Virus record (IMG/VR): IMGVR_UViG_3300027963_000035 | Location: 124,001 to 188,000 of that record | Strand: one strand, 5' to 3' | Length of the DNA stretch: 64,000 nt | In this document: piece by piece, positions 11,234 to 38,939 of the stretch | Layout: the number at the start of each line of letters is the position of its first letter | How positions within the stretch are numbered: position 1 is the stretch's first letter | Position numbers and translations under genes: made by a program | The notes under the pieces: generated by a model | The model's input: the letters and a program-made list of their open reading frames with translations, nothing else | What the model was told of the DNA's origin: nothing | Database searches by the model: none

Positions 11234-11250
11234 TTACTATAATATATTAT

Positions 11251-24901: not shown

Positions 24902-25219
24902 TTTTCTCCTTTTGGTTTTTTACCGTACCAAAAACATAAAGTTTAACCCTAGATTTAACTAGGGTTGTTGCTTTTAACACTAGCCAGTTCACCGTATAGG
25001 TTAACTGCAAGATACAGTGCTTCTCTCTTGTTAGCAGCCCATACATACCCGACAACGCCGACTCGCCAGTAAACTTCCCATTCAGTAAGCATGGTATTGG
25101 CTCCGTGGTTAATGGTTCACACCCAATCTACGTACCAAAAACTAAAAAGAAAAATCCCCCGATCATAATGAAAACTCTACGCTTAGCGTGGAATCACCAA
25201 TATGATCGGGGGAGAGTCT

Positions 25220-25624
25220 TTATTCTGCCCCTAGTGCCACTTTCACGGCATTGACCATTTGACCATAGAAACTACCGGCAAAGTTGCCCCCACACATTTC
25301 TGCTAGTTCCCGCTGAAATGCGGTTGGGGTCATTCCGCCCTTACGATTACCCTCTCTGTAGACCGTAGCCTTAGCCTTTACTTTCACAAAGTCCAGTTTG
25401 TGATTCTGACGCTCTACGGTGCGATCTGGAGCCGTAATACTAAAAGTGCCTCTTCCGGCCCGATTAGTATAAACAACCCGCCAGACTTGATCCTCGCTCG
25501 CCTTGGAGTGTCGGATGGTTCCCTTTACCATCAAGCCACCAACACGGCGAAACTCTGTGCCGTTTTCTGTCTCAAAAGGATAGAACTTGATTGGCTTGGG
25601 TTCATCAACGATTTGCCACGGCAT
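25220..25624 (-). CDS. hypothetical protein
   Basis: 134 aa, AAGGA RBS, motif at 25661, long hairpin downstream (25155-25213). Confidence 0.7.
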   Translation of the reverse strand: MPWQIVDEPKPIKFYPFETENGTEFRRVGGLMVKGTIRHSKASEDQVWRVVYTNRAGRGTFSITAPDRTVERQNHKLDFVKVKAKATVYREGNRKGGMTPTAFQRELAEMCGGNFAGSFYGQMVNAVKVALGAE

Positions 25625-25691
25625 TGTCTGATTCCTTAGTGGTGTTGGTTACAACTATAACCCGTACTAGATACTATCCCCGTAGGGATCA

Positions 25692-25907
25692 TCAACCCGT
25701 GATGACACTCAGCACTTCATCGTTGAGCGGGTTGATTACCGGATCGAACTCGACCGGAACTTCAACTTCACGCTGATTCTGGATGATGTTGACAATCGCA
25801 TTGACCAGAACCCGCTCGTTGACAGTGTAGTGACCCCGATTGTGAATCTCCTTTGAGGCTTCCATGTCCTTGAGCAACTTCAGGCGACGAGTCTTAGTAA
25901 CTTTCAT
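25692..25907 (-). CDS. hypothetical protein
   Basis: AGGAG RBS, motif at about 25943. Confidence 0.65.
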   Translation of the reverse strand: MKVTKTRRLKLLKDMEASKEIHNRGHYTVNERVLVNAIVNIIQNQREVEVPVEFDPVINPLNDEVLSVITG

Positions 25908-25955
25908 CTCTAACTCCTGAGAAGTGGAGGGAACAACACTAACCCGTACCGGATT

Positions 25956-26234
25956 CTAGTCATGCCTCTTGATTCGATAGTTCATGCCGCCCTCGACCAG
26001 CAGATTCCATCCGTAGGAATCCAATGAATCAATCAACTCCTCAAATACAAGACGATCCGGCAGGAGTGATAACATGATCTTCGGTCCATTGACCTTGCCG
26101 ATGAGCCAGTGTACCGCCCGTTCACGGTCGAATGCCGCCACCCTTTCGGGGTCGAACCGATGGATGAAGGTGCATGGGAACGGCTCTTCTCCGAACCGCT
26201 GAACCAGATCATCAATAGTGGTTTCTAACGCCAT
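25956..26234 (-). CDS. hypothetical protein
   Basis: AAGGA RBS, motif at 26266. Confidence 0.65.
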   Translation of the reverse strand: MALETTIDDLVQRFGEEPFPCTFIHRFDPERVAAFDRERAVHWLIGKVNGPKIMLSLLPDRLVFEELIDSLDSYGWNLLVEGGMNYRIKRHD

Positions 26235-26278
26235 GATTTCCTTTCGTTTCGGGTAACAACTCCCGACCGTACCGGATT

Positions 26279-26479
26279 CTAGTTGATTTCTAGAATATCT
26301 ACCCTCAAACCATCCTTATGGTAACTCTCACCCCTAGAATATCGGGGGAGGGTTGAATGAGTTACTGACGGGTCAAACTTAATAATCCAATCGTCCGCAC
26401 AACCCACTGCATCATAGTAGTTGTCGAAACTGGTAACACTCTCAGGAACACTGTCACGAATGACCATTGCAAGCCACAT
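26279..26479 (-). CDS. hypothetical protein
   Basis: AGGAG RBS, motif at 26502. Confidence 0.65.
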   Translation of the reverse strand: MWLAMVIRDSVPESVTSFDNYYDAVGCADDWIIKFDPSVTHSTLPRYSRGESYHKDGLRVDILEIN

Positions 26480-26515
26480 TTGGATTCTCCTTTGAAGTTT
26501 TACCGTACCAAATCT

Positions 26516-26722
26516 TTATGATTTGAACTGTCGGTCTTTGCTCATAATCCTGTTAACGGCAGCCCAACTCCACTGAAAACTCTTTGGGCCGTTCAACTGA
26601 GCCACAGTAGGAAACTTCTCAAGGAAGCCCACGATTTTAGCGGGCTCCCCATCAAGCCAGCAAGCATTGTCGTTCTTCCACTGTTCAACAGCAAACTCAT
26701 GATCCTCGATTGTGCTTCTCAT
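26516..26722 (-). CDS. hypothetical protein
   Basis: AGGA RBS, motif at 26769. Confidence 0.65.
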   Translation of the reverse strand: MRSTIEDHEFAVEQWKNDNACWLDGEPAKIVGFLEKFPTVAQLNGPKSFQWSWAAVNRIMSKDRQFKS

Positions 26723-26780
26723 TTTTAATCCTAGTTATTAAAAGTAAAAGTAAGGCTCACAAGTCTTTACCGTACCAAAA

Positions 26781-26827
26781 TCGACCGCTAGGATTGAACC
26801 TAGTGAATCCCCAAACGGGACGGTCGA
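26781..26827 (-). ncRNA. truncated tRNA-like element (acceptor stem, one hairpin, T arm)
   Basis: TCGACCG TCCC GTTTG GGGA TTCA CTAGG TTCAAT CCTAG CGGTCGA. Confidence 0.45.
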
Positions 26828-26990
26828 AGATTGTTTAGCGTGGGTTGTTATTATCAATGATAATAGAAATAATACCGCTACACAATCCAAGGAAGCACAT
26901 CATTTGAAGACTCTTCAGGTATTCACAACCAGTCAGATTCCCGGCTTCGACCAGGAACCAGAAACCGTACCCATGGGAAACCCCGTGGGC

Positions 26991-27026
26991 CTCACCCCCC
27001 GGCCTATTGTTTGGCCGGGGGGTGAG
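26991..27026 (-). terminator. 14-bp GC hairpin after HTH paralog
   Basis: ctcaccccccggcc / ggccggggggtgag. Confidence 0.65.
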
Positions 27027-27037
27027 TGTGACTAACT

Positions 27038-27298
27038 TCAGAGCATCTCGACGCCAAGGCTGGCGAGAATCTCCGTCGCACGCTCCTTGGTATTGCTGGT
27101 GCGACCACCACCCTCAAACTTCGGGATATTCAGCCCGTGCTTCTTCCGCAACTGGCTCAGACGCACCGACACCGAACCCGGAACGATGCCCAACTTGCTT
27201 GCAACGTCCTCGACGCTGCCACCAGCCCGCTGCACTTCGATAACCGTGGTGAGAAACGTCTCAAGATCAACACCCTTCTGACCAACTTGGCGACCCAT
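27038..27298 (-). CDS. small sigma-region-4-like HTH protein (paralog 2)
   Basis: MGRQVGQKG..GGSVEDVASKLGIVPGSVSVRLSQLRKK; AGGAG RBS; motif at 27377. Confidence 0.8.
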   Translation of the reverse strand: MGRQVGQKGVDLETFLTTVIEVQRAGGSVEDVASKLGIVPGSVSVRLSQLRKKHGLNIPKFEGGGRTSNTKERATEILASLGVEML

Positions 27299-27396
27299 AG
27301 TAATCATCTCCTGCTTATAGTTACCAACCCTTTGGTTCCCGCTTGCCTCATTGGCTTGCTGTCGGAACAAACCCTAACCGTACCGAATCTTATCCT

Positions 27397-27660
27397 TTAC
27401 CGATTATGACAACGGAAACCGTCTCTCCGTGTCATATTTGCTTCAATCTCCCTAAAAAGATCCCTCATAGCCAGATAGTTCTTAAACTCTGGCTCCTTTT
27501 CAAACTGTGTAGCGGCTTCGATAAGGCTTGAAACCGGCTTCACAGTCTCCCTTGCGTAATAATCTTCAAGGAAACCAAGAGTGTATCGGTCAAGACCACT
27601 ACTGGTTTTTGTATCGTCTGGCATTTTTTCTCTCCAGAAACCGTAAAAACTGTTTTCCAT
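27397..27660 (-). CDS. hypothetical protein (predicted leaderless)
   Basis: ATG 8 nt after TACGGA. Confidence 0.65.
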   Translation of the reverse strand: MENSFYGFWREKMPDDTKTSSGLDRYTLGFLEDYYARETVKPVSSLIEAATQFEKEPEFKNYLAMRDLFREIEANMTRRDGFRCHNR

Positions 27661-27871
27661 ATCTCTGCTCCGTACTAAAAACTAATCTTCGGGGTGAGGG
27701 CCGGGAACACCGTTGAAAAACGGGTTTGGCATCCAAACATCATAATCAGTTAAAATCCATTGACGTTCTGGATGTTCGGCCCCAACATGAAGTGCGTATT
27801 CCCGCATTGCATCAATAGGTTTTGCAAGTTCATCTGGCATCAATCGTCTCCTTTTTTATTGGAACGATAGT

Positions 27872-28078
27872 CTACCGTACCGAAAAGTCACTCTCACACC
27901 AGCCCATAGCCTCCGCCATGTCCTTCTTTATTCCCGGGATCGTCCAAACATTGGCTTCCTGCCTTGATGCTTGCCAACCCTTGAAGGGAACATATCGGAG
28001 TTGATACACAATATCTCCCTCTTTTGCTTCGTAATACGGCTTTGTATTATACCGATTCTTTTTCTTTTGCCAAAGCAT
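27872..28078 (-). CDS. hypothetical protein
   Basis: GAGGAG RBS; ends SVR-stop inside the motif. Confidence 0.6.
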   Translation of the reverse strand: MLWQKKKNRYNTKPYYEAKEGDIVYQLRYVPFKGWQASRQEANVWTIPGIKKDMAEAMGWCESDFSVR

Positions 28079-28123
28079 TGTTATTCTCCTCTGGTTGATA
28101 ACTGTACCTGATCTTACCTGATC

Positions 28124-28444
28124 TTACCTCTTGTAGAGATAACTACCATAGGGATCACAAACTTCGACCAACCTTTGAATATCGTTCACAACATTAAATC
28201 TTGCTCCATTTTTGGCCGGAGCCTTCCAACTTGCTGCCTTATAAATATCCCCATTTTCGTCTATAAAGGCATGGACACTTTTGTTAGCACCCCACAGCGG
28301 TTCCCCGTTACTATCCAGCCAACGCTCTTGACGAACCACTCTAGTATACTTTCGCCCCGGTTCAAGAATGTATTTAGTCTCAGCCCCAGTGGTGTTAGAC
28401 TTCTCAGTCAAAGCAGCGAGCCAAAGTTCGACTTGTTCTTGCAT
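28124..28444 (-). CDS. conserved phage protein
   Basis: GRKY..V...SVHAFID..GD.YKAASWKAPAK pattern common in large phages. Confidence 0.75.
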   Translation of the reverse strand: MQEQVELWLAALTEKSNTTGAETKYILEPGRKYTRVVRQERWLDSNGEPLWGANKSVHAFIDENGDIYKAASWKAPAKNGARFNVVNDIQRLVEVCDPYGSYLYKR

Positions 28445-28476
28445 TGTTATTTCTCCTCTGTTGCCTATTCACCGTA

Positions 28477-28785
28477 CTAAATCAGATTCCGGCCCTTCAG
28501 CCATTCATAGACAACACCGCTGGCGTTGTTGATCTTCATATTATCATTCTGGCAGTCGTTAATAAGGTTGATTAACAATACCCTATTGATATTAACGCCC
28601 TTAACGGGAAGATGCCACCAATCCCCAATATCACAAAACTCCAGTCTAAGGTATTCTAATACCTTGTCCCGATAGTTTTTCCTTGAGGCAAGATCGTGTT
28701 TATTGTATCCCTTGTGGGCGTCGTGACCCTTCACGTTCTTAGTCCCCCACCAATCTTCATAGAATCCATCGTAGAAGTCGTTCAT
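28477..28785 (-). CDS. hypothetical protein
   Basis: AGGAG RBS; TAG stop overlaps the motif at 28471. Confidence 0.65.
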   Translation of the reverse strand: MNDFYDGFYEDWWGTKNVKGHDAHKGYNKHDLASRKNYRDKVLEYLRLEFCDIGDWWHLPVKGVNINRVLLINLINDCQNDNMKINNASGVVYEWLKGRNLI

Positions 28786-28812
28786 TGTGTTTCTCCTTGA
28801 TGATTGATCGTA

Positions 28813-29025
28813 CTAGAAAAGTTCTCTATAGCCGGGGAACTCGTCAATATATCCCACCTGCCATTCAGTACCATCCTCAGCAATCATGGTTTTAATCTTA
28901 GAGGTTGGCTTGTAAAGTGCATTGACCAAAGTATCAATCGCCCAAAAGAAACTCGCTACGATCACAACCATACCAACAAGACTAGTCAGATACATACCGA
29001 TGATGAAAATGTCTGTTGTTGTCAT
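28813..29025 (-). CDS. small membrane protein
   Basis: N-terminal TM helix; motif at 29062. Confidence 0.6.
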   Translation of the reverse strand: MTTTDIFIIGMYLTSLVGMVVIVASFFWAIDTLVNALYKPTSKIKTMIAEDGTEWQVGYIDEFPGYRELF

Positions 29026-29059
29026 CTTTATTACTCTTTAGTGATGTTAGGACAAATCT

Positions 29060-29242
29060 TTACCGTACCAAAATCTGACGGAGTTCATCAGAGAGAGTTT
29101 TTTCTCGCTCCAGAGTTTCAACAATACTACCCAGCCTCATGCTAATGAAGTTGAGAGTATCAGGCTCAACCATACCCTGACTATTCAGGGGAGCAGTATC
29201 CACAAAAATCCTGAGCATCTTGAGAGTATCAATGGTATCCAT
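29060..29242 (-). CDS. hypothetical protein
   Basis: AAGGA RBS; ends LVR-stop in the motif. Confidence 0.55.
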   Translation of the reverse strand: MDTIDTLKMLRIFVDTAPLNSQGMVEPDTLNFISMRLGSIVETLEREKTLSDELRQILVR

Positions 29243-29575
29243 TAGTTCAATCCTTTAGCGACAGAAATAAAGAGGAATATAGATAAAAAGATAACTAGTC
29301 CAGAAAATCAAGAAAGCCAAAATGCCTAGACCACTAACCATACCAAACGTGTCAACATCATCTGGATGTTCACCAAACAGATTGTAGCAAATCCAGTTTT
29401 TCATTGTGAAAACTTTCCTGCGAGAAATCCAAGACAAAATACAATATTCAGAATCGGTAGAATGAACACAAAAAAGATAAAACAAGCACGATACATTTTC
29501 TTTTCCTTAGAAGTATCCATACTGGTCTAACGTCCAGTGGCGTTTTTGACTTCCACCGCTTATAGGATACCTGTA

Positions 29576-29749
29576 CTAGAAACTTTCAAATGCGTCCCAG
29601 AATCCCACCTTATTGCCGTTAGAGTCTTTGAGAACCCCATCATCCCCTGCTTTAATGTTAGAGGGGATTTGAGTTAGAATCTCACCCAGTTCGTTGGGGT
29701 TATCATTAAAACTAGCGTTGTCCATGTTCACTTCAATAATGATTTTCAT
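29576..29749 (-). CDS. hypothetical protein (predicted leaderless)
   Basis: MKIIIEVNMDNASF..DSNGNKVG, 57 aa, ATG 8 nt after TACGGT at 29758; below ORF-track cutoff. Confidence 0.6.
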   Translation of the reverse strand: MKIIIEVNMDNASFNDNPNELGEILTQIPSNIKAGDDGVLKDSNGNKVGFWDAFESF

Positions 29750-29763
29750 ATTTATTCACCGTA

Positions 29764-29988
29764 CTAAAAAGGATAATCTTCGGGCCACTCTTGACTCTGA
29801 CTATATATTTCCATTTCATCATAGTGGGCATTGAGTTCTGGATCATTAGTAAGTTCAACATAATGACCCCGTTCACAAACGATGTTACGCTTCTCCAGAA
29901 TCTTATAGATGATTCTTTCGGCGTTAGTAAGATCGGCAACGCTAATGCCGATGATAGCCCGTGCGATTTGTTCCAGTTCAGTGTTCAT
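29764..29988 (-). CDS. hypothetical protein
   Basis: AGGAG RBS, motif at 30013. Confidence 0.65.
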   Translation of the reverse strand: MNTELEQIARAIIGISVADLTNAERIIYKILEKRNIVCERGHYVELTNDPELNAHYDEMEIYSQSQEWPEDYPF

Positions 29989-30228
29989 CTTTTGCTCCTT
30001 GGGTAAGGTGGAACCGTACTAGATGTTATTGAACTCTGTGCTAAGATACTTCATATCTTCACCGCACTTTTCGCATACCGGGGTTCCGGCATCTTCATAC
30101 CACCACGGAGTAACATGAGTAACACAATCACAATCTGCACAACGCCAAACGTGACGGAGTTTAGTATCGTCGATAACAGTCCAGTTTTCCATTTTATTCT
30201 CCTTGAGTAAGTTGGAACCGTACCAGAA

Positions 30229-30531
30229 TCAACGAATCGTGTTGTTGGGCGTCTGACAAATCATAATCTGCTGCTGAGATTGTGAGGACTGATTTACCAC
30301 AGCAATCTCCATAGAGCCTTGCTGATTGACCCTGCACCAATATGTTCCGGTAGAATCACTCCAATACCGGTAGTTATTATCATAGCCCCTATAGACATTG
30401 TATTGGGGTTCAACACGATGATACTTCCTTGCCTCCACAATCGTATGAACAACAGGGGCGGCTTCCTTACCACACTGGAGACAAGCAACAAGTAATCCAA
30501 CAACTAAACTGGCAATCTGAAGGTAAAACAT
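30229..30531 (-). CDS. hypothetical protein with signal/TM segment
   Basis: Hydrophobic N-terminus, motif at 30574. Confidence 0.65.
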   Translation of the reverse strand: MFYLQIASLVVGLLVACLQCGKEAAPVVHTIVEARKYHRVEPQYNVYRGYDNNYRYWSDSTGTYWCRVNQQGSMEIAVVNQSSQSQQQIMICQTPNNTIR

Positions 30532-30595
30532 TTTCTAATCCTTTGAAGAATGTTTGTTTCGGAACAACCCACAACCGTACCAAAATCAACTATCT

Positions 30596-30898
30596 TTAAC
30601 AAGCCAAATCTTCATTTTTATCTGCGAGGTAGTTTTTGTTTTCTTCACAATCTTCTACCAAGCGAGAATACAAAAATCTTTGTTCAGGGGTATTTTTGTT
30701 TTTGTATACTAAGCCCTGCCCCCGATTCCAGTTGGGTGCAAGGAATATGGCAGAGGCTAAGAGGTCTAACTCCTCATGCAAGAAGTCAATCGTAAAACCA
30801 TTGTTCCTCAGATCATTCGCAGCATTTTCAATGTTTTGATAAACCTTGAAGTTAGTGTATGGATGAACTGGGTCAAAAACAACAAATACAGTTTTCAT
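30596..30898 (-). CDS. hypothetical protein
   Basis: AAGGA RBS, motif at 30927. Confidence 0.65.
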   Translation of the reverse strand: MKTVFVVFDPVHPYTNFKVYQNIENAANDLRNNGFTIDFLHEELDLLASAIFLAPNWNRGQGLVYKNKNTPEQRFLYSRLVEDCEENKNYLADKNEDLAC

Positions 30899-30938
30899 GT
30901 TATCTTCCTTTATTGTCTTTCACACAACCGTACCAAAA

Positions 30939-31142
30939 TCAACTATCCTTTAGACATTCCCTGATCATTTGGATTAGATTAGAAGCGTCACCCAAAGCCG
31001 CAGATTCAAAATCATTTTCAAGATTTTCAGCGACATTATCAAGGATTGTCTCGATATTTCGTAGTGCAATAGCAGTATCCTTTGACGATACAGGCCAGTC
31101 AATACCAAGAGCCTCTGCTATTTGTTTCTTGGTTATTCTCAT
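30939..31142 (-). CDS. hypothetical protein
   Basis: AAGGA RBS. Confidence 0.6.
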   Translation of the reverse strand: MRITKKQIAEALGIDWPVSSKDTAIALRNIETILDNVAENLENDFESAALGDASNLIQMIRECLKDS

Positions 31143-31187
31143 TATTTTCCTTTTGTATTGATATACCGGCTGAGAATGGATCGACTT

Positions 31188-31266
31188 ATGGAACGATGGG
31201 ATTTGAACCCATAACTCCTCTTGCTTTTAAAGCAAGTGGAACTCTATCCAGTTGAGTTACGCTCCA
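31188..31266 (-). tRNA. atypical tRNA-like RNA with elongated anticodon arm (loop UU UAA AA)
   Basis: TGGAGCG/CGTTCCA acceptor, ACTC/GAGT D stem, ATGGG TTCAAAT CCCAT T arm; anticodon arm 23 nt instead of 17. Confidence 0.7.
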
Positions 31267-31516
31267 CGATAGTTTCACAAATAGTGTCCGGTATCACGCA
31301 CTATTCAACCTTATTTAGGTTTCTATCCGACCCCTGACGCATTTATATTGAATCTGTGCCGGGAATCCAACCCGGATAGAGAGCAGCATAAGCCTCACCA
31401 TAGCCTAGTTCGGCAACCCCATACACCCATTAGATGCAGACGCTGTTTGCTGGGCTATCTCTCTACTGTCGGCAGACACACAGTTTGTATCTCGTTGACT
31501 CCACACCGTACCAAAA

Positions 31517-31795
31517 TCAATCGTTCTCGTATATGCCCTTAGTATATTCTTTTGGAATGATTGGACACCAACCTTTAGCCTTTTCATTATCATAAGGCAT
31601 CCAGAATGGAGCATCACAAGCGTCTACTACTCCGAACTTATTATTCACAAAGATATGAGGACAAAGTTTAGTCCCCTTTATTTCACGTTCTTCATAATGG
31701 TATTTGCCAATACCGATCCCAATATTAGGGCCGAAGTAATAAACTTCCTGATCCTTTTCTGGAGGGAAGTTATGACTGCTTTTCCATGTGTTCAT
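31517..31795 (-). CDS. hypothetical protein (predicted leaderless)
   Basis: ATG 8 nt after TACGGT at 31804. Confidence 0.65.
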   Translation of the reverse strand: MNTWKSSHNFPPEKDQEVYYFGPNIGIGIGKYHYEEREIKGTKLCPHIFVNNKFGVVDACDAPFWMPYDNEKAKGWCPIIPKEYTKGIYEND

Positions 31796-31801
31796 GTTTT
31801 T

Positions 31802-32011
31802 CTACCGTACCGAATACAGACTGGCGATTGTTTCACCGTCAAAGTTTTTGTTTAATTCTTTTATATACTTCTCGGCTGATTCTTTATTCTGCCATTTAAC
31901 TACAAATGGCTTTTGGTGAATATCACCTTTATCGGTAACTGGCTTGTGATCCTTATAAACCACAAACCAGCGGCCTTCTTCTTTCACAGAATAGTTATTT
32001 GATCGTTTCAT
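31802..32011 (-). CDS. hypothetical protein
   Basis: Follows tRNA-Glu; ends SVR-stop in the motif. Confidence 0.55.
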   Translation of the reverse strand: MKRSNNYSVKEEGRWFVVYKDHKPVTDKGDIHQKPFVVKWQNKESAEKYIKELNKNFDGETIASLYSVR

Positions 32012-32023
32012 GTTGTTTAAAAG

Positions 32024-32095
32024 TACCCCGTGCCGGTAACGCTCCGGCGTCCCTGAGATGAAAGCCCAGTATACTAACTTCTATACGAACGGGGC
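32024..32095 (-). tRNA. trnE: tRNA-Glu(UUC)
   Basis: GCCCCGT/ACGGGGT acceptor, CTGGG CT TTC AT CTCAG anticodon arm, T loop AGCGTTA; motif 10 nt upstream. Confidence 0.85.
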
Positions 32096-32136
32096 ATGGT
32101 TGTTTACCGTACCAAAAACAATATAGTCTATAACAA

Positions 32137-32174
32137 ATAAAAAATAAACCCCCTCCGTTTTACGGGAGGGGGTT
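32137..32174 (-). terminator. intrinsic terminator after HTH paralog
   Basis: aaccccctccg / cgggagggggtt hairpin with T-rich tail on the minus strand. Confidence 0.7.
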
Positions 32175-32206
32175 CGTATGGCCGATTATTATATCAGCCT
32201 TTAACT

Positions 32207-32461
32207 TCAACCAACCCCAAGGCTGGCGAGAATCTCAGCCGCCCGCTCTGCGGTGTTGCTGGTGCGGCCCGACCCCTCGAACCGGGGGACGTTCACACCG
32301 TGCTTCTTCCGCAGTTGCGAGAGACGCACCGACACCGAACCGGCCGTGATGCCCAGAGCATCGGCAACGTCCTGCACCGAACCGCCGGCCCGCTGCGTCT
32401 CGACCACCGTGGTCAGGAACTTCTCCAGAGCGACACCCTTCTGTCCAACTTGACGACCCAT
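32207..32461 (-). CDS. small sigma-region-4-like HTH protein (paralog 3)
   Basis: GGSVQDVADALGITAGSVSVRLSQLRKK; very GC-rich codons; motif at 32535. Confidence 0.8.
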   Translation of the reverse strand: MGRQVGQKGVALEKFLTTVVETQRAGGSVQDVADALGITAGSVSVRLSQLRKKHGVNVPRFEGSGRTSNTAERAAEILASLGVG

Positions 32462-32571
32462 AGTAGTAATCTCCTGCGTTATTCAACCCTTTGTTGCCGT
32501 TTGCCGAAGTGGCTCACCGTCGCAACGTCCATCAACCGTACCAAAAGACAAGTTTCTCTGTTTATTTCTTT

Positions 32572-32895
32572 TTATTTCTGGAATGAGTTCAGAGTTATAT
32601 TCGTTAACTCAGTTGAAACTTCTTCAAGTTCCTTCTGTATTTCCTTCTTCCTTCTCGCTAGTCTCTTAACCTTTTCGGCTTCTTTAATCTTCACACTATT
32701 GTCAAACTGTTTAATGCAATCAAGCATTAAAGTTTCAACATCATTGCCTGTACTAAAAGTTACTTCGCCATAATCGCCATCTCTAACCGTAACCCTAAAT
32801 CCACGGACATGATTACCGATTATAAAGTTTCTTCCGAAACCTTTTGATAAGAAAAGTTTTACTTTAGGGTGTAGCATACTCATATTATTCTGCAA
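32572..32895 (-). CDS. hypothetical protein
   Basis: 107 aa, C-terminal coiled coil. Confidence 0.6.
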   Translation of the reverse strand: MQNNMSMLHPKVKLFLSKGFGRNFIIGNHVRGFRVTVRDGDYGEVTFSTGNDVETLMLDCIKQFDNSVKIKEAEKVKRLARRKKEIQKELEEVSTELTNITLNSFQK

Positions 32896-33247
32896 ACCTT
32901 AGTGGACTATTGTTATTATTTTCGTCTACAGGGTTCGCAGAAGAAACAATTTCATTCACAGAAGGTTTGAAACTAACCGTCACAGAACTAGCATCACGGC
33001 GGGTCATGCCAGTCGCTAGGCAGAAACTAAGTTTAGCATCACTTTCTTCCTTCCTAAATTCCTCTAGGATTTGATCCTGAGTTACAGGTTCACCCATAAG
33101 GTTACTAACCGTACCTCCAAAGATTTCCATAACTTCACAGATTCCGCCGTACCACATAGTGGCATCACCGGGATCGCAGTTATAAATATTGAGCCTGTCC
33201 TCAATGTTGTTGAGTTTAACAGTGCAATAATAACGATAATGTTCCAT
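32885..33247 (-). CDS. hypothetical protein
   Basis: AAGGA RBS, motif at 33274. Confidence 0.65.
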   Translation of the reverse strand: MEHYRYYCTVKLNNIEDRLNIYNCDPGDATMWYGGICEVMEIFGGTVSNLMGEPVTQDQILEEFRKEESDAKLSFCLATGMTRRDASSVTVSFKPSVNEIVSSANPVDENNNNSPLRFAE

Positions 33248-33441
33248 TTTTTCTATCCTTTCGTTACTACTCTACCGTACCAAAAACTATCGGGCCGTTT
33301 CTTCCTTAACTGTTTCCATGACAATTAAATTTTCATCATAAGGAAGATTATCCAAAAAATTATGTAATTTTTCTGGATTTTCATATGGGTCGTATTTGAT
33401 TTGCCCTTGTTCATAGTAAATGTGAACGTAAAACATTACTA

Positions 33442-33654
33442 TTATTTAGCAGACCTGTATTCAACCTGAATAGTAGAATTTCTACTAACCATCTTCACAA
33501 AATTTGAAACACTTTCCCAATCAGGACTAGAGTCAATATACAACTCTTTTTCAGACCCGGGGAAGGCACTCAGTAAATATATTTCAAAACCACCGGAAGG
33601 ATACTCACCATCAACATATGGTTTATTTGTATTGATTACAATGTATTGTTTCAT
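33442..33654 (-). CDS. hypothetical protein
   Basis: ATGA overlap with the upstream gene. Confidence 0.6.
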   Translation of the reverse strand: MKQYIVINTNKPYVDGEYPSGGFEIYLLSAFPGSEKELYIDSSPDWESVSNFVKMVSRNSTIQVEYRSAK

Positions 33655-34004
33655 TCAAAACTTTTCAACAGTACCACATTTGGAAAGTAGTTCCAAACAT
33701 TACTGGGGTATTCTGAACTATTGTTTAATATGGGCTCGCCACTAATATACCAGTTGAAATCTTTCTGGTAAATATTTCTACCTTCACAAAATTTACGAAG
33801 GATACAATTAAGCCGGCTCTTGGTAACATATGTAGTGTATCCCTGATTATTAATCCCTACAGTCTTGTTGGTAATTTTAGCAATCAGGTTATTAAACAAA
33901 AAGACAAGAATCACATCATCGGCAACTTCAACCCTAGTGTTGCCACAAGAATGATTCTTCTTGTTCAAGATGCTATCAATCATCTCTTGTTCAATCTTAC
34001 GCAT
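33651..34004 (-). CDS. conserved phage protein
   Basis: MRKIEQEM...GNT.V...G..T..TKSRLN pattern; motif at 34038. Confidence 0.7.
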   Translation of the reverse strand: MRKIEQEMIDSILNKKNHSCGNTRVEVADDVILVFLFNNLIAKITNKTVGINNQGYTTYVTKSRLNCILRKFCEGRNIYQKDFNWYISGEPILNNSSEYPSNVWNYFPNVVLLKSFE

Positions 34005-34127
34005 CTTCTTCCTCAAGAGGGAGGTCGGGAAACTCCAACCGTACCAGAAACTATGTGGTTGAGAGAATGATTTAATGCGTTGATTGGTATATATAATACA
34101 TATAACCAAAAATCAAAAGGAGTATAT

Positions 34128-34595
34128 ATGAATAGCTGTAAATATTGCAATAGAACTATAAACAATAAAGGCTCTCTTGCATCTCATGAATTATGTTGTC
34201 AAAATAATCCCAAAAGAGTCAAAAGAATAAAATCACCAAAAGCAGGTGTTCAAAAAGGTTGCATACCTTGGAACAAAGGCAAAAAATTTGATGAAATAAC
34301 CTCCGCCAGTTTAAAAGAAAAAATAGAAAGTGGACAATATAAAACGTTTTGTGAATATCATGCTCGTAAATTAATAAAAAAATACTTAATACAAACACAT
34401 GGACATAAGTGTATAATGTGCGGATTATCGGAATGGCTAGGAGTCAGAATTCCCTTAGTTTGTGATCATATAGATGGTAATGCTGAAAATCATGATTTAT
34501 CTAACATGAGAATTATATGTAATAATTGCGATTCAATAACTGCAACTTTTAAAGGAAGAAACAGAGGCAAAGGAAGGAAAAATAGATATAAATAA
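34128..34595 (+). CDS. HNH endonuclease
   Basis: CIMCG..W....PL..DHIDGN..N....N.R.ICNNCD. Confidence 0.85.
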   Translation: MNSCKYCNRTINNKGSLASHELCCQNNPKRVKRIKSPKAGVQKGCIPWNKGKKFDEITSASLKEKIESGQYKTFCEYHARKLIKKYLIQTHGHKCIMCGLSEWLGVRIPLVCDHIDGNAENHDLSNMRIICNNCDSITATFKGRNRGKGRKNRYK

Positions 34596-34664
34596 AGTTT
34601 AGAATAGTATATACCTATAGATTAACAATGACGTTAATCATGTTTTTTTAAAAGGAGTTTTATT

Positions 34665-35120
34665 ATGAGTGCAACAACATCACAAGGCACAGGTTTAGGA
34701 ATGGCCCCTAACCAAGTTTGTTTAACAGCCGCTGGCCCTCACATTGTCGCTGCTGGCATTGCCAGAACAGGAACTGTAGGATCAGACGGACAAACTAACA
34801 ATTGGTGGATCACAGTTGATTTAGAAGAAGTATTACCTTTAAATCCAGATATGTATAGTGTTATACTAACACAATGCGACGAAGAAGGTGCTTTACAAGG
34901 CGAGAATGGTCAAAGACCAAACCACGGCCCTCACGTTGAAAAATACGTTAAGGTCAATGGAACTCGTTATAACAAGTATGGTATTGACGATGAGTTCGAT
35001 AACTATGATAACTGGAAGAACAATGGTTTAGCTGGTTTCGTTATTCACTCAGGTGACGGCGATCCACACACCATGCAATACGTTGTAGTAAGAAATGGTT
35101 TCTTAAGACTAAGTAACTAA
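34665..35120 (+). CDS. hypothetical protein, possibly structural
   Basis: AAGGAG RBS, followed by a terminator. Confidence 0.7.
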   Translation: MSATTSQGTGLGMAPNQVCLTAAGPHIVAAGIARTGTVGSDGQTNNWWITVDLEEVLPLNPDMYSVILTQCDEEGALQGENGQRPNHGPHVEKYVKVNGTRYNKYGIDDEFDNYDNWKNNGLAGFVIHSGDGDPHTMQYVVVRNGFLRLSN

Positions 35121-35148
35121 TAATTTAACTAAAAACACATTCGGTGTT

Positions 35149-35178
35149 AACCCCAAGACTAACCTCTTGGGGTTTTTT
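35149..35178 (+). terminator. intrinsic terminator between convergent genes
   Basis: aaccccaag / cttggggtt followed by a T run. Confidence 0.75.
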
Positions 35179-35407
35179 ATTGTACCAAACCCTTTTGTAT
35201 CTGCCAATTCTTATGCTCCATAACAACGTCGATATTATTACGAAGTAGATTATCAGGAGCAGTATCACAATACAAACTAATCATCTCGAGAATATCGTCT
35301 AAACTATTCTTGAGAATATTATCTTGAGTTAAACTCTTTGAATAAGAAAGTTTACTGGCGATCTTGCAAAAGAGTATGGCCTGTTCCTTATCCATAAGAT
35401 TCACCAT
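35177..35407 (-). CDS. hypothetical protein
   Basis: 76 aa, coupled to HTH paralog 4. Confidence 0.55.
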   Translation of the reverse strand: MVNLMDKEQAILFCKIASKLSYSKSLTQDNILKNSLDDILEMISLYCDTAPDNLLRNNIDVVMEHKNWQIQKGLVQ

Positions 35408-35631
35408 TGTGGCACAGGGGCTCCCTTAGCCCGGAGTTTATGACAACGCTGCCTTACTGCTTGAGGAGAGATCCCCAATTCATTTGCAACACTAATACTG
35501 TTTCCGCCATTCTTAACGGCTTCTACAATACTCTTGAGGAAAACGTCAAGGGGGATTCTCTTATTCTTCTTCTGAGTGGCTTCAGTTTCACCACCAAGAA
35601 TGAAATCACTAAAGTCAATATCGTCTAGCAT
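35401..35631 (-). CDS. small sigma-region-4-like HTH protein (paralog 4)
   Basis: IPLDVFL..GGNSISVANELGISPQAVRQRCHKLR; motif at 35659. Confidence 0.75.
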   Translation of the reverse strand: MLDDIDFSDFILGGETEATQKKNKRIPLDVFLKSIVEAVKNGGNSISVANELGISPQAVRQRCHKLRAKGAPVPQW

Positions 35632-35847
35632 CTAGAGTTCTCCGTGTGACACCCTCACACCGTACCAGATTCTACCGTTCTCTCTACCCAGATTTCACAA
35701 CCAAACTTCATTCTGGCGAATCTATTTGCGTCCCATTCGCTATAAGCAGATACATACCCTGCTATTCGGTTGTTCTTCCAAACAATCCAAGTATATTTTT
35801 CCATAATACCTCTATTATAATCTAATAGAGGATATTGGTCAATACAT

Positions 35848-36201
35848 TTAAACACCACTCTTAAGAGCCCGATTAGTAGCAATCTTCACACCCAGTTTAC
35901 GATTAAACATTCCGCCTGCTGGAACATTAAACTTACCCCTCAGATCACGACCATCAGGAGTAGTAATCTCCACAATAGTAAAGCCGCCCTTGCAACTGAG
36001 TTCCCAGTTCACACTTTGAACTAAGTTGTTAAATTGTTCATATTCACGCTTGCTCATATATTCGTGAATAATTTCTGGAGAGTTAGCATGATCCGGAGTA
36101 ACACAACGGAGATAAACCCGTCCGTGATAAACACGAACCTTATAACCAGTCTTACGAAGAACTTCTACGTTTGGCATTTCAATTTTAGTCAAGGTAGTCA
36201 T
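35848..36201 (-). CDS. hypothetical protein
   Basis: 117 aa, AAGGA RBS. Confidence 0.65.
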   Translation of the reverse strand: MTTLTKIEMPNVEVLRKTGYKVRVYHGRVYLRCVTPDHANSPEIIHEYMSKREYEQFNNLVQSVNWELSCKGGFTIVEITTPDGRDLRGKFNVPAGGMFNRKLGVKIATNRALKSGV

Positions 36202-36216
36202 AATTAAATTTCCTTT

Positions 36217-36441
36217 TTACCAGGGGCGGGCAGGGTCACGACGAAGAATTTTTTTCTTCTTCTTATAAAAAGCCTTAGTCTCTGATTCAACTTGTTCTTT
36301 GAACTCTTTGATTCTAGATCGTAAATCTGCGACTTTTTCACTAAATGTAAGTGTCGAAGTTTCAAAGTCCTTGCTAATCTTGTTAAGTGGAGGCATACCA
36401 CTAACAAATTTGTGCCACCAATTAGAATGTTGATCACTCAT
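36217..36441 (-). CDS. hypothetical protein
   Basis: TAATG overlap with the upstream gene. Confidence 0.55.
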   Translation of the reverse strand: MSDQHSNWWHKFVSGMPPLNKISKDFETSTLTFSEKVADLRSRIKEFKEQVESETKAFYKKKKKILRRDPARPW

Positions 36442-36761
36442 TAAAGATCCCTCTTTCTTTTAACATCCTCAACAGTATGATTATACTCTATTCCACTTTC
36501 TCGGCAATATCTGCTGATGGGATAGTATCCACTAAAACGTCCATAACCATTATCAACAAGCCACTTACCGGCATTGTATGACCATTGATCCCCATACCCA
36601 TAAGTGAAAGGAATCTTATGAACCAAATGGTCATTTACCCAAATTTCAACGGTATGGTAGGTATTACCATAAGAGCGTTGAAACCATCGACGAGCATGAA
36701 GATAAATTTTCTTAACTTCAACAAAACTGGTGAGGAGTTTTTCTTTTTGGATTGTTTCCAT
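36441..36761 (-). CDS. conserved phage protein (predicted leaderless)
   Basis: RWF....GNTYH.V....YGYG; ATG 8 nt after TACGGT at 36770. Confidence 0.7.
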   Translation of the reverse strand: METIQKEKLLTSFVEVKKIYLHARRWFQRSYGNTYHTVEIWVNDHLVHKIPFTYGYGDQWSYNAGKWLVDNGYGRFSGYYPISRYCRESGIEYNHTVEDVKRKRDL

Positions 36762-36809
36762 GCTCACTCACCGTACCAGAGGGAAAGAAAATTTTTACTA
36801 TTTTAGGAT

Positions 36810-37421
36810 ATGGATCCTGCTTCAAAATACCCAAATCAATATGATTTATGTTCCTGTGGTAAACACAAAACAATCTTGTCTAAACATTGTATCAAATGCT
36901 GCAATAATGGTCAAATAAAATATCTAACAATCAAAGATGCGATGGTATCAGCACTGCATGGACAAAGTGCAAAATTTAATGTTGTCAGAAACAGAGCCAG
37001 GGTTCAATATAGGAATATAAAGTGTCAATTTTGCGGATACGATAAACACGTTGAAGTTTGTCACATTAAACCAATCCACTCATTCCCAGAAGAAACTTTA
37101 ATATCTGAGGTGAATGACCAGTCTAATATTTTAATTCTTTGTCCCAATTGTCATTGGGAGTTTGACAAAAAGAATCAAAAACCTAGAAAAGAAAAAATAA
37201 AAAAACAAAGACCAAGGAAGGTTGAATGGCCCACAAAAGAATTACTAAAAAAACTTGTATGGGAAATGCCAACCATTCAAATTGCTAAACAATATGGAGT
37301 ATCTGATAAAGCTGTTGGTAAATGGGTAAAGAAATATAATCTAACCAAACCACCAAGAGGATATTGGAGAAAAAACAAAGAGTGCGACCCCTGGGAATCG
37401 AACCCAGAACCCCAAAATTAA
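36810..37421 (+). CDS. HNH endonuclease with C-terminal HTH
   Basis: CQFCGY...VEVCHIKPI...N...LCPNCHWEFD; IAKQYGVSDKAVGKW. Confidence 0.9.
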   Translation: MDPASKYPNQYDLCSCGKHKTILSKHCIKCCNNGQIKYLTIKDAMVSALHGQSAKFNVVRNRARVQYRNIKCQFCGYDKHVEVCHIKPIHSFPEETLISEVNDQSNILILCPNCHWEFDKKNQKPRKEKIKKQRPRKVEWPTKELLKKLVWEMPTIQIAKQYGVSDKAVGKWVKKYNLTKPPRGYWRKNKECDPWESNPEPQN

Positions 37422-37455
37422 AAGTTTCGTGCTCTGCCAATTGAGCTAGGGTCGC
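37383..37455 (-). tRNA. trnK: tRNA-Lys(UUU)
   Basis: GCGACCC/GGGTCGC acceptor, GCTC/GAGC D stem, CT TTT AA loop, CTGGG TTCGATT CCCAG. Confidence 0.92.
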
Positions 37456-37511
37456 CCGACTTAATCAACAACAAAACACTACCGTACCAGAAACAAACTT
37501 TTCGTCAACCC

Positions 37512-37543
37512 CTCCCCTCCCCCACATTAAAGGGGGAGGGGAG
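37512..37543 (-). terminator. GC hairpin after HTH paralog
   Basis: ctcccctccccc / gggggaggggag. Confidence 0.65.
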
Positions 37544-37556
37544 AAGATTAAATCCT

Positions 37557-37811
37557 TCACTCAACCCCAAGCGAGGCAAGGATAGCCGCTGCCCGTTCAG
37601 CGGTGTTGCTAGTCCGACCACCACCCTCAAAGCGGGGGATATTCAGACCATGCTTCTTCCGCAACTGCGAAAGACGCACCGAAACCGAACCGGCCACAAT
37701 GCCCAGTTCGTTCGCAACATCTTCAACACTACCGCCAGCCCGCTGCGTCTCGATGACACAGGTGAGGAAACGCTCCAGCGACACACCAGCCTGACCCTTA
37801 GCACGACCCAT
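37557..37811 (-). CDS. small sigma-region-4-like HTH protein (paralog 5)
   Basis: MGRAKGQAG..GGSVEDVANELGIVAGSVSVRLSQLRKK; motif at 37877. Confidence 0.8.
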   Translation of the reverse strand: MGRAKGQAGVSLERFLTCVIETQRAGGSVEDVANELGIVAGSVSVRLSQLRKKHGLNIPRFEGGGRTSNTAERAAAILASLGVE

Positions 37812-37894
37812 AGTATTAAACTCCCTCTTTAACAACCCTTTCTTCCAGACTCACGTTGAATCGGGAACAACCACCAACCGTACCAAAAGGAAAC

Positions 37895-38380
37895 TTACTT
37901 CTTTCTTAAACTACCTAAAAACCTGTCTTTGACACTATAAAGAACTTTTTCGTAATCTTTAATGAAAACTTCAATTTGATCGTGTTCACCTGGTGCTGAT
38001 ACATCCATACTCACATAATCCTCGCCCTGCATACCCTGTTCACTATAGTCTACTGCGTTGAGTCCCTTTTTACTGAAACCTAAATCAATAAGACTTTTCT
38101 TAAAGGTAGTCAGCCAAAGTTTATCGGTATAAATCAAACCATGCTTTTCAACATTCCAAGTTTTCTTGGAAAAATACGCCCTTAATTCAAAACAATCATC
38201 GTGTCCTTCGTAAGTGTTCAAATCAAGTTCGATTATCTTCACAAAGTCTTTAACTACACCACTCCAATAACCGCTACCTTCAGTAGAGGTGACTAGACTC
38301 ACTTTACGAATATAATGATAACAATCTGGACGCACTTTAAGGCCAGTTTCAATCCAGTCAGGACGAGGATTAATCTTCAT
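37895..38380 (-). CDS. conserved phage protein
   Basis: G.GYWS...EL..YF...W....HGLIYTD...DYSEQGMQG..YVS. Confidence 0.7.
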   Translation of the reverse strand: MKINPRPDWIETGLKVRPDCYHYIRKVSLVTSTEGSGYWSGVVKDFVKIIELDLNTYEGHDDCFELRAYFSKKTWNVEKHGLIYTDKLWLTTFKKSLIDLGFSKKGLNAVDYSEQGMQGEDYVSMDVSAPGEHDQIEVFIKDYEKVLYSVKDRFLGSLRKK

Positions 38381-38585: not shown

Positions 38586-38612
38586 GGTCAAAAAGCGTAC
38601 CAGAGGGAAACT

Positions 38613-38903: not shown

Positions 38904-38939
38904 GACAAGAGACCGTACCAAAAAGAAAAGAAGAAACCT

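What the first reader, a model, noticed from the sequence alone, without database searches (positions are those of the whole stretch)
31188..31266. tRNA-like RNA with intact acceptor, D and T arms but an anticodon arm 6 nt too long
Seen: the anticodon arm is CC A CTTGC TTTAAAA GCAAG A GG (23 nt). The loop reads UAA (Leu), or UUA (ochre) in a shifted register, but the short variable loop is not Leu-like and the D loop (AACTGGATA) looks Arg-like. The extension is base-paired, which argues against random decay. Inference: a decoy for anticodon nucleases or synthetases, a recoding tRNA, or a non-translational RNA.
Basis: partly seen in the sequence, partly recalled or inferred. Interest (0 to 1): 0.6.

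Follow-up and report, generated by a model that had tools for sequence, protein, structure and literature searches.

The report
Phage tRNA relic with over-long anticodon arm
A freshwater giant phage carries a tRNA-shaped gene whose anticodon arm is three base-pair layers too long to work on a ribosome; it sits in a small, dispensable, shuffled cassette and is most likely a non-decoding tRNA relic, perhaps still cut by tRNA-processing enzymes.

Summary
A 79-nt tRNA-like gene lies on the minus strand at 31188-31266 (Infernal tRNA model 46.7 bits, cut-off 29). Acceptor, D and T arms are intact. Three extra nucleotides flank each side of a normal 5-bp/7-nt anticodon hairpin (loop UUUAAAA, anticodon UAA).

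Its upper body is Arg(UCU)-type. It has no Leu-type long variable arm, and its discriminator is U. The phage also has a genuine class II tRNA-Leu(UAA).

The gene belongs to a 193-nt module bounded by TCAATA repeats. The module lies in a region rich in a repeated promoter-like motif, and has no such motif of its own. The nearest relative (93-97% identical DNA) lacks the whole 874-bp cassette. Another population has the flanking genes without the module. A second haplotype has a 1-nt deletion inside the anticodon stem, and a third shows a 2-nt insertion at the same site. No relative with a normal 17-nt arm was found. The extension never varies, so nothing shows covariation. Its pairing alone is weak evidence (chance about 0.05-0.15).

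Best reading: a non-decoding tRNA relic, read through from an upstream promoter. It is possibly still a substrate for RNase P, RNase Z and CCA addition. No data support a decoy or recoding role. Expression could not be tested.

The parts
31188..31266 (-). tRNA-like gene, 79 nt. Acceptor UGGAGCG/CGUUCCA, D arm ACUC-AACUGGAUA-GAGU, T arm AUGGG-UUCAAAU-CCCAU, discriminator U, no encoded CCA.
   Evidence: Infernal RF00005 46.7 bits; ARAGORN; RNAfold cloverleaf, z -4.1.
31216..31240 (-). Extended anticodon arm: U-A, C-G, C-G, A.A mismatch, 5-bp stem CUUGC/GCAAG, loop UUUAAAA (U33, anticodon UAA, A37). At DNA level it is a near-perfect 25-nt palindrome.
   Evidence: Sequence; insertions cca/gga in the Infernal alignment; pair probabilities; indel hot spot at 31232 in relatives.
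31159..31351 (-). 193-nt module: 85-nt leader, tRNA-like gene and 29-nt trailer, bounded by TCAATA direct repeats. Absent as a unit from a near-identical population where the 67-aa ORF directly follows CACAGAT.
   Evidence: Joint 31158->31352 in run X6; sequences of L141-L143.
31354..31483 (-). Upstream conserved tRNA-shaped RNA, about 130 nt: acceptor-like stem, small D-like hairpin, very long central arm, T-arm-like hairpin CCGGG-UUGGAUU-CCCGG. Probably co-transcribed with the tRNA-like gene.
   Evidence: Homologues upstream of the 67-aa ORF family in other phage contigs. RNAalifold: 31 pairs, 11 with compensatory changes. No Rfam family matches.
31505..31520 (-). Promoter-like motif TTGATTTTGGTACGGT. 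It is the nearest one upstream of the tRNA-like gene, about 240 nt away.
   Evidence: 12 copies on the minus strand within 24.9-38.9 kb, 0.07 expected. Copies sit about 10-45 nt upstream of tRNA-Glu, tRNA-Lys and small-ORF starts.
30939..31142 (-). 67-aa ORF, 46 nt downstream of the tRNA-like gene. A conserved family in freshwater phage contigs. Replaced by an unrelated 66-aa ORF in haplotype B.
   Evidence: No Pfam or PHROG family.
30590..31463 (-). 874-bp cassette: upstream RNA, tRNA-like module, 67-aa ORF, motif and 100-aa ORF. It is missing from the closest relative, G001. Its left edge abuts the motif copy at 30574-30589.
   Evidence: Synteny blocks and pairwise alignment. Loci L091 and L094-L096 also lack it.

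Best explanation
This is a tRNA-derived gene that no longer decodes. Its upper half is a well-formed Arg(UCU)-type tRNA body: acceptor stem, D arm with G18 G19 A20, T arm UUCAAAU, and U8/A14 and A15/U48 in place. Three extra helical layers between position 26 and the anticodon stem would push the anticodon about 8 A further out and rotate it by about 100 degrees, so it should not fit the ribosomal tRNA sites.

It lies in a 193-nt module without its own promoter motif. It is therefore most likely transcribed by read-through from the phage promoter-like motif 240 nt upstream. The transcript would be one precursor: tRNA-shaped RNA, leader, tRNA-like gene, small-ORF mRNA. Enzymes that read only the acceptor/T-arm minihelix and elbow should still recognise it. 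These are RNase P, RNase Z and the CCA-adding enzymes, of which the phage encodes two paralogues. If they cut there, the element acts as a punctuation mark that separates the upstream RNA from the downstream mRNA. The anticodon arm would then be free to drift.

Shown: the structure, the context, dispensability, indel polymorphism, redundancy with a real tRNA-Leu(UAA), and incoherent identity elements.
Inferred: non-decoding status, co-transcription, and processing by tRNA end-maturation enzymes. Whether that processing is selected for or merely tolerated cannot be told from these data.
For: Structure:
- Infernal and ARAGORN calls, and the fold, with 3+3 inserted nucleotides.
- A unique D-to-T span among about 320 tRNAs of related loci.

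Identity:
- The 5' 25 nt equal a cyanobacterial tRNA-Arg(UCU), but the anticodon is UAA and the discriminator is U.
- The same genome has a class II tRNA-Leu(UAA) with A73, interrupted by a group I intron at U34|A35.
- UUA is the commonest Leu codon, and TAA, TGA and TAG all serve as stops.

Dispensability and variation:
- G001 (93-97% nt identity) lacks window 30590-31463.
- Four further contigs lack it.
- L141-L143 have the upstream RNA and the 67-aa ORF but not the module.
- Haplotype B (L089, L093, L137, L138, and run X13) has a 1-nt deletion in the inner stem. This gives a 6- or 8-nt loop and lowers the Infernal score to 37.4 bits. It also has C66U, which keeps a G.U pair.
- A contig in run X6 has +CA at the same site.

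Transcription and processing context:
- Twelve promoter-like motifs precede the true tRNAs and ORFs. None lies next to this gene.
- The phage encodes two PolyA_pol/CCA-adding paralogues.
- Precedent: the T4 tRNA cluster is one precursor for eight tRNAs, the species I and II RNAs and segB mRNA (PMC2330249).
Against: - No expression data at all. No listed holder of the stretch is an RNA run.
- The relatives I could read are nearly identical, so the intact upper half may only reflect recent origin rather than selection.
- The more diverged copies (X6 at about 83% identity, one X13 contig at about 86%) were seen only as difference tables, not as sequences.
- A punctuation role is not needed to explain anything observed. 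A neutral relic fits equally well.
- The clean symmetry of the extension, and its identity in both haplotypes, could still mean that the long arm itself is the functional part.
Confidence: 0.5

Rival explanations
1. A dead pseudogene with no effect. A tRNA gene, probably Arg(UCU)-type, had its anticodon arm damaged by insertion or recombination. It now hitch-hikes in a shuffled cassette until it is deleted.
For: Presence/absence polymorphism. Indels of -1 and +2 in the arm. No promoter motif of its own. Redundant with a real tRNA-Leu(UAA). The score falls from 46.7 to 37.4 bits in haplotype B.
Against: All upper-body and tertiary-pair positions are intact. The one substitution seen in a stem (C66U) keeps pairing. 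Both haplotypes persist in several independent samples. An intact acceptor/T-arm would be cut by RNase P and RNase Z regardless, so 'no effect' on the transcript is unlikely if it is transcribed.
Confidence: 0.22
2. A decoy or sponge for a host tRNA-targeting factor, such as an anticodon nuclease or a synthetase. It would present a tRNA body and a U/A-rich anticodon loop on a longer stalk, and would soak up the factor without entering translation.
For: The intact tRNA body with a canonical U33-UAA-A37 loop in haplotype A. This phage lineage keeps several other tRNA-shaped RNAs with remodelled anticodon arms that are conserved with covariation. So tRNA mimics appear to be used here.
Against: Loop size is not conserved: haplotype B has a 6- or 8-nt loop. 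The gene is absent from near-identical phages. It has no strong promoter of its own, whereas a stoichiometric decoy needs high abundance. No tRNA-repair genes (RtcB, Rnl1) were found in the 251-kb fragment, though the Rnl1 search rang in no control genome and the record is only about 50% complete.
Confidence: 0.12
3. A working decoder: an unusual tRNA reading UUA/UUG, or UAA in a shifted register, despite the long arm.
For: Canonical 7-nt loop with U33 and A37. UUA is the most used Leu codon in this AT-rich phage.
Against: Three extra helical layers are far beyond the +1 tolerated in tRNA-Sec and tRNA-Pyl (established tRNA geometry). There is no Leu identity (U73, no class II arm), and no Arg identity (A35 instead of C35). 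A true tRNA-Leu(UAA) is present. TAA is the main stop codon. Haplotype B has a non-7-nt loop.
Confidence: 0.05
4. The signal is at DNA level. The 25-nt near-palindrome TCCACTTGCTTT-A-AAAGCAAGAGGA would be a protein operator or recombination site, for example for the adjacent small helix-turn-helix-like ORF, that happens to lie in a tRNA relic.
For: A near-perfect inverted repeat. The small ORF starts 46 nt downstream, and its N-terminus looks helix-turn-helix-like by eye only.
Against: Any anticodon arm with a UUUAAAA loop is palindromic by construction. Haplotype B breaks the symmetry and is linked to a different ORF. No Pfam support for DNA binding in the 67-aa protein.
Confidence: 0.04
5. 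An intron-bearing tRNA. The outer helix (CCACU/AGAGG) would be the true anticodon stem, and part of the 13-nt interior would be spliced out.
For: For haplotype B, Infernal aligns the outer helix as the anticodon stem with a 14-nt insert. This phage has several intron-bearing tRNAs.
Against: Removing any contiguous 6 nt (5 nt in haplotype B) from the interior never gives a 7-nt loop with U33. This was enumerated by hand. Six nucleotides cannot hold a group I core. Rfam finds no intron here.
Confidence: 0.03

Closest known systems
Class I elongator tRNA (Rfam RF00005), specifically bacterial tRNA-Arg(UCU)
   Same: Cloverleaf with a 7-bp acceptor stem, 4-bp D stem, 5-bp T stem and UUCAAAU T loop. 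G18 G19 A20 are present. The 5' 25 nt are identical to Microcoleus tRNA-Arg(UCU).
   Different: Three extra nucleotides on each side of the anticodon stem. Anticodon UAA instead of UCU (no C35). Discriminator U. Dispensable and indel-polymorphic among close relatives.
tRNAs with naturally lengthened anticodon stems: tRNA-Sec, tRNA-Pyl, mammalian mt-tRNA-Ser(UCN) (own knowledge; tRNA-Pyl's 'extended anticodon stem' is mentioned in PMC11441406)
   Same: Position 26-44 is drawn into the anticodon helix, leaving a short (3-nt) variable loop.
   Different: Those have 6 bp (+1) with compensating changes elsewhere, and they decode UGA, UAG or UCN. Here the helix has 9 layers (+3 beyond the 26-44 pair), no compensation, and a different anticodon.
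T4 tRNA-cluster precursor with species I and II RNAs and segB mRNA (PMC2330249)
   Same: In a T4-like phage, tRNAs, non-tRNA stable RNAs and a small-ORF mRNA are made from one transcript and separated by tRNA processing.
   Different: No sequence similarity. Here the tRNA-shaped unit is itself non-canonical, and processing has not been shown.
PeSL mobile regulatory cassettes of T4-type phages (PMC2839356; PMC4122927)
   Same: A repeated promoter-bearing motif fills a hyperplastic region of small ORFs. Insertions, deletions and replacements between near-identical phages have their edges at or near the repeats.
   Different: The motif sequence is different (TTGATTTTGGTACGGT). A linked terminator stem-loop was not established. 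The tRNA-like module itself is bounded by a 6-nt TCAATA repeat rather than by the motif.
tRNA-like processing signals: mitochondrial tRNA punctuation and MALAT1 mascRNA (own knowledge)
   Same: A tRNA-shaped fold serves only as an RNase P/RNase Z cutting site. The anticodon region is not used for decoding and is free to vary.
   Different: Those are eukaryotic or organellar systems with experimental proof. Here the role is an inference.

Membership tests
Functional elongator tRNA (RF00005) | Cloverleaf with acceptor, D and T arms scoring above the family threshold | tested here: met
   46.7 bits against a gathering score of 29. Haplotype B scores 37.4 bits.
Functional elongator tRNA (RF00005) | A 17-nt anticodon arm (5 bp + 7 nt) stacked directly on position 26; D-to-T span of 22-26 nt in class I | tested here: not met
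   3-nt insertions on both sides. The span of 27-28 nt is unique among about 320 tRNAs of related loci.
Functional elongator tRNA (RF00005) | A 7-nt anticodon loop with U33 and a purine at 37, conserved in relatives | tested here: not met
   Met in haplotype A only. Haplotype B has a 1-nt deletion giving a 6- or 8-nt loop. Run X6 has +2 nt at the same site.
Functional elongator tRNA (RF00005) | Identity elements consistent with the anticodon | tested here: not met
   UAA anticodon, but U73 and no long variable arm. The body is Arg-type but lacks C35. The genuine tRNA-Leu(UAA) of the genome is class II with A73. The identity rules are taken from E. coli literature (own knowledge).
tRNA pseudogene or relic | Recognisably tRNA-derived, with a change incompatible with decoding | tested here: met
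   The incompatibility with the ribosome is inferred from tRNA geometry, not measured.
tRNA pseudogene or relic | Dispensable: absent from close relatives without replacement | tested here: met
   G001 and four other contigs lack the cassette. L141-L143 lack only the module.
tRNA pseudogene or relic | Not expressed or not processed | not testable with these tools
   No RNA run among the 20 listed holders of the stretch.
Group I intron-containing tRNA | A catalytic intron core inside the anticodon loop | tested here: not met
   Only 6 extra nt, and no Intron_gpI match here. Other tRNAs of the genome do carry one.
tRNA-Sec / tRNA-Pyl type (extended anticodon stem) | A 6-bp anticodon stem with a UCA or CUA anticodon and compensating architecture | tested here: not met
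   A 9-layer helix, anticodon UAA, and a standard 7/5 acceptor/T arm and D arm.
PeSL-like shuffled cassette (context, not the RNA itself) | A repeated promoter motif in a hyperplastic region, with indel edges at the repeats | tested here: inconclusive
   12 motif copies against 0.07 expected. The left edge of the 874-bp indel abuts a copy. The right edge lies about 40 nt inside the next unit. The module's own edges are TCAATA repeats. Promoter and terminator activity were not tested.
Anticodon-nuclease or synthetase decoy | Binds or is cleaved by a host factor; abundant during infection | not testable with these tools
   No expression or host data. The loop is not conserved between haplotypes.

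The most novel reading that the evidence does not exclude
The element is the smallest member of a set of phage tRNA mimics. This freshwater T4-like lineage keeps several tRNA-shaped RNAs whose anticodon arms are remodelled. The changes range from +3 bp here, through 27-30-nt branched inserts, to an arm of about 95 nt in the RNA just upstream. Some of these are conserved with compensatory changes, and the upstream one has a promoter-like motif about 20 nt ahead of it. They would be matured by the phage's own CCA-adding enzymes and would act off the ribosome, for example as sponges for tRNA-targeting defences or as carriers for non-ribosomal aminoacyl transfer.
Probability: 0.15. Interest if true: 0.7.

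Novelty: new variant of a known kind. Interest (0 to 1): 0.35.

Why it matters
Taken alone, the element is a curiosity: a phage tRNA gene caught with a cleanly lengthened anticodon helix. It shows how tRNA genes in the hyperplastic regions of huge phages are gained, remodelled and lost within populations that are more than 93% identical.

It matters more as a pointer. The same lineage holds conserved tRNA-shaped RNAs with non-tRNA anticodon arms, tRNA genes interrupted by group I introns, and its own CCA-adding enzymes. If any of these mimics is functional off the ribosome, this would be a new layer of phage RNA biology. The focal gene would then be a simple construct for testing which tRNA-handling enzymes tolerate a longer anticodon arm.

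Tried and rejected
Searches for homologues:
- Exact or degenerate pattern scans of IMG/VR for the arm, the 5' half, the 3' half, T arm plus D arm with a variable gap, and a flanking ORF start seen in run X6. These gave nothing, or chance or unrelated hits.
- blastn of 701 bases around the gene against GenBank phages: no match.
- BLAST of the gene against 12 related records. The best match was only 79% over 43 nt, to a tRNA-Pro(UGG) of LR756511.1.
- The single metagenome scan found one independent contig, which is haplotype B.
- Look-ups by exact neighbouring proteins returned only haplotype A, haplotype B or module-less arrangements.
- The more diverged copies in runs X6 and X13 were visible only as difference tables. 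Their sequences could not be retrieved, so no covariation test of the arm was possible.

Alternative readings tested:
- Alternative genetic code. Code 11 gives normal coding density, and all three stops terminate long ORFs.
- Mini-intron. No contiguous deletion restores a U33 loop.
- A coding explanation for the stretch. Only an antisense 57-aa TTG ORF overlaps it, which I judged spurious.
- Sigma-70 promoter scan. No more sites than in shuffles, and none in the leader.

Other:
- Pfam and PHROGs on the cassette ORFs were uninformative.
- Literature searches for extended anticodon stems or tRNA-like decoys in phages found no precedent.
- One paper search failed on a term that was too short.

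Full report
**What is there**

The window is bases 124001-188000 of a 251-kb IMG/VR record. The record carries a T4-type portal that contains an intein. Its nearest named relative is the 595-kb uncultured huge phage LR756511.1, at 51% portal identity. The runs that hold the DNA are freshwater and lake metagenomes. Code 11 fits: coding density is normal, and TAA, TGA and TAG end 72, 36 and 10 of the 118 ORFs of 200 aa or more.

On the minus strand at 31188-31266, Infernal's tRNA model scores 46.7 bits against a threshold of 29. It aligns the whole model, with a 3-nt insertion on each side of the anticodon stem. ARAGORN calls tRNA-Leu(taa). The minimum-energy fold is the cloverleaf with the long arm, z -4.1.

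In RNA sense the gene reads as follows:
- acceptor UGGAGCG/CGUUCCA
- U8 A9
- D arm ACUC-AACUGGAUA-GAGU
- the arm U-CC-A-CUUGC-UUUAAAA-GCAAG-A-GG-A
- a 3-nt connector GUU
- T arm AUGGG-UUCAAAU-CCCAU
- discriminator U, with no encoded CCA

The excess is 3+3 nt, and with U27-A51 the arm is a 9-layer helix with one A.A mismatch. The extension is moderately stable, with pair probabilities of 0.44-0.59. Its pairing alone would arise by chance with p about 0.05-0.15. Among about 320 distinct tRNAs that ARAGORN finds in 916 kb of related loci, this is the only one whose D-to-T distance falls between class I and class II.

**Identity**

The 5' 25 nt are identical to Microcoleus tRNA-Arg(UCU), and the T arm and 3' acceptor strand are similar to it. 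However, position 35 is A, not the C that ArgRS requires, and the discriminator is U, not the A that LeuRS requires. These are E. coli identity rules, taken from my own knowledge. There is no long variable arm.

The same genome holds a genuine class II tRNA-Leu(UAA) with A73. It is interrupted by a group I intron after U34 (G000 213430-213716). UUA is the commonest Leu codon, but that need is already covered. An ochre-suppressor reading conflicts with the loop register and with TAA being the main stop codon.

**Context**

The motif TTGATTTTGGTACGGT occurs 12 times on the minus strand between 24.9 and 38.9 kb, against 0.07 expected. Copies lie about 10-45 nt upstream of tRNA-Glu, tRNA-Lys and the starts of small ORFs. 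It behaves like a phage promoter. The tRNA-like gene has none of its own; the nearest copy is at 31505-31520.

Between that motif and the gene lie two elements:
- A tRNA-shaped RNA of about 130 nt (31354-31483). It has homologues upstream of the same 67-aa ORF family in other freshwater phage contigs, and 11 of its 31 predicted pairs show compensatory changes.
- An 85-nt leader.

A 67-aa ORF starts 46 nt downstream of the gene. The likely transcript is therefore motif, structured RNA, leader, tRNA-like gene, ORF. This is an inference. T4's tRNA cluster is a precedent, because it is one precursor for tRNAs, the species I and II RNAs and segB mRNA (PMC2330249). The phage encodes two CCA-adding-type nucleotidyltransferases. 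Neither tRNA-Glu nor tRNA-Lys of the window is followed by an encoded CCA.

**Relatives**

| Source | What it shows |
|---|---|
| G001 (323-kb contig, 93-97% nt identity, 99% portal identity) | Collinear, but window 30590-31463 is replaced by about 40 nt |
| L091, L094, L096 | Also lack the cassette |
| L092, L097, L098 | Carry the identical gene |
| Haplotype B: Ga0114963_10000622, a Logan contig, run X13 | Loses one C from the inner stem, giving a 6- or 8-nt loop; scores 37.4 bits, with Infernal now pairing the outer helix. Carries C66U, which keeps a G.U pair. Linked to a different downstream ORF |
| Run X6, one contig | About 83% identical, with +CA at the same site |
| The same population (L141-L143) | Has the upstream RNA and the 67-aa ORF but lacks the 193-nt module. 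The junctions show that the module is bounded by TCAATA repeats |

No relative with a normal 17-nt arm was found, and no homologue exists in IMG/VR. The pattern resembles the modular shuffling described for hyperplastic regions of T4-type phages (PMC2839356).

**Interpretation**

Five findings argue that the RNA does not decode:
- the extra helical layers
- the incoherent identity set
- redundancy with a real tRNA-Leu(UAA)
- dispensability
- indels of -1 and +2 at one site in the arm

Its upper half is intact, so if it is transcribed it should still be cut by RNase P and RNase Z and receive CCA. In practice it would then punctuate the transcript. I cannot tell whether that is selected or merely tolerated. 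I put 0.5 on the processed, non-decoding relic and 0.22 on a wholly inert pseudogene.

A decoy role (0.12) gains some plausibility because this lineage keeps other tRNA-shaped RNAs with remodelled arms. The non-conserved loop, the absence from near-identical phages and the lack of its own promoter count against it. Decoding (0.05), a DNA-level palindrome (0.04) and a mini-intron (0.03) are poorly supported.

**Limits**

- There are no RNA data.
- The only readable variants are near-identical.
- The diverged copies could not be retrieved.
- The geometric argument against decoding is inferred, not measured.

Noticed in passing
window 20281-20554 (-); also G000 208765-209029, 213430-213716, 227768-228046: Three or four tRNA genes of this phage are interrupted by group I introns in the anticodon loop. 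Rfam Intron_gpI scores 68.6, 59.2 and 50.8 bits; the intron in tRNA-Leu(UAA) did not reach the gathering score. They are a tRNA with anticodon UCA (opal-suppressor-like or Trp-UCA-like), tRNA-Met(CAU), class II tRNA-Leu(UAA) with the intron at the cyanobacterial U34|A35 site, and tRNA-Arg(UCU). TGA still ends 36 of 118 long ORFs, so the role of the UCA tRNA is open.
   Followed up: partly
window 31354-31483 (-): A conserved tRNA-shaped RNA of about 130 nt: acceptor-like stem, small D-like hairpin, a central arm of about 95 nt, and a T-arm-like hairpin. It lies just downstream of a promoter-like motif. Homologues sit upstream of the same 67-aa ORF family in phages of about 150 kb. 11 of 31 pairs are compensatory. 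No Rfam family matches.
   Followed up: partly
G000 220664-220763 (outside the window); G001 106394-106492; L075 1191-1289; L129: A 99-nt Gly(UCC)-like tRNA-shaped RNA with a 27-30-nt branched insert in the anticodon arm, conserved across distant phage contigs. One inserted hairpin covaries (CUGC/GCAG versus CACUG/CAGUG), while the 'anticodon loop' length is not conserved.
   Followed up: partly
G000 227562-227703; G001 90877-91016; G002 105790-105926: tRNA-Asn(GUU) genes carry a conserved insert of about 66 nt inside the anticodon loop. The insert is too small for a group I intron and contains its own T-arm-like hairpin. The flanking anticodon stems covary (UUCGA/UCGAA, UUUGA/UCAAA, AGCGG/CCGCU), so this looks like a spliced intron of unknown type.
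   Followed up: partly
window 24922-38927, minus strand: The motif TTGATTTTGGTACGGT occurs 12 times (0.07 expected), about 10-45 nt upstream of tRNAs and small ORFs. It is a likely phage-specific promoter and a likely substrate for cassette shuffling.
   Followed up: partly
window 32023-32095 (-): tRNA-Glu(UUC) has a non-canonical T loop (AGCGUUA) and scores 41.6 bits. The 93-97% identical relative G001 has a different, canonical tRNA-Glu (59.1 bits) at the same place. G001 also has an 87-nt class II tRNA with loop UUACUAA where this window has other sequence.
   Followed up: no
window 1-554 (-) with G000 123304-124554; G000 96704-97909: Two PolyA_pol-family (CCA-adding type) nucleotidyltransferase genes in one phage, possibly a split CC-adding and A-adding pair.
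   Followed up: no
L007 11459-13969 (G000, outside the window): A T4-type portal protein interrupted by an intein. The intein is shared with LR756511.1 and with IMG/VR relatives down to about 50% identity.
   Followed up: no
window 3723-6947 (-), 12423-15917 (-), 11224-12435 (+), 53359-54282 (-): Very large DUF5122 beta-propeller proteins, and eukaryote-type glycosyltransferases (GT61, GT17) in a tailed phage.
   Followed up: no
related loci (phages of about 150 kb): Near-identical 78-nt 'Leu' tRNAs with anticodons CAA, CAG or UAG on one body. They have a 6-bp anticodon stem and a U-rich 6-nt variable loop instead of a class II arm.
   Followed up: no
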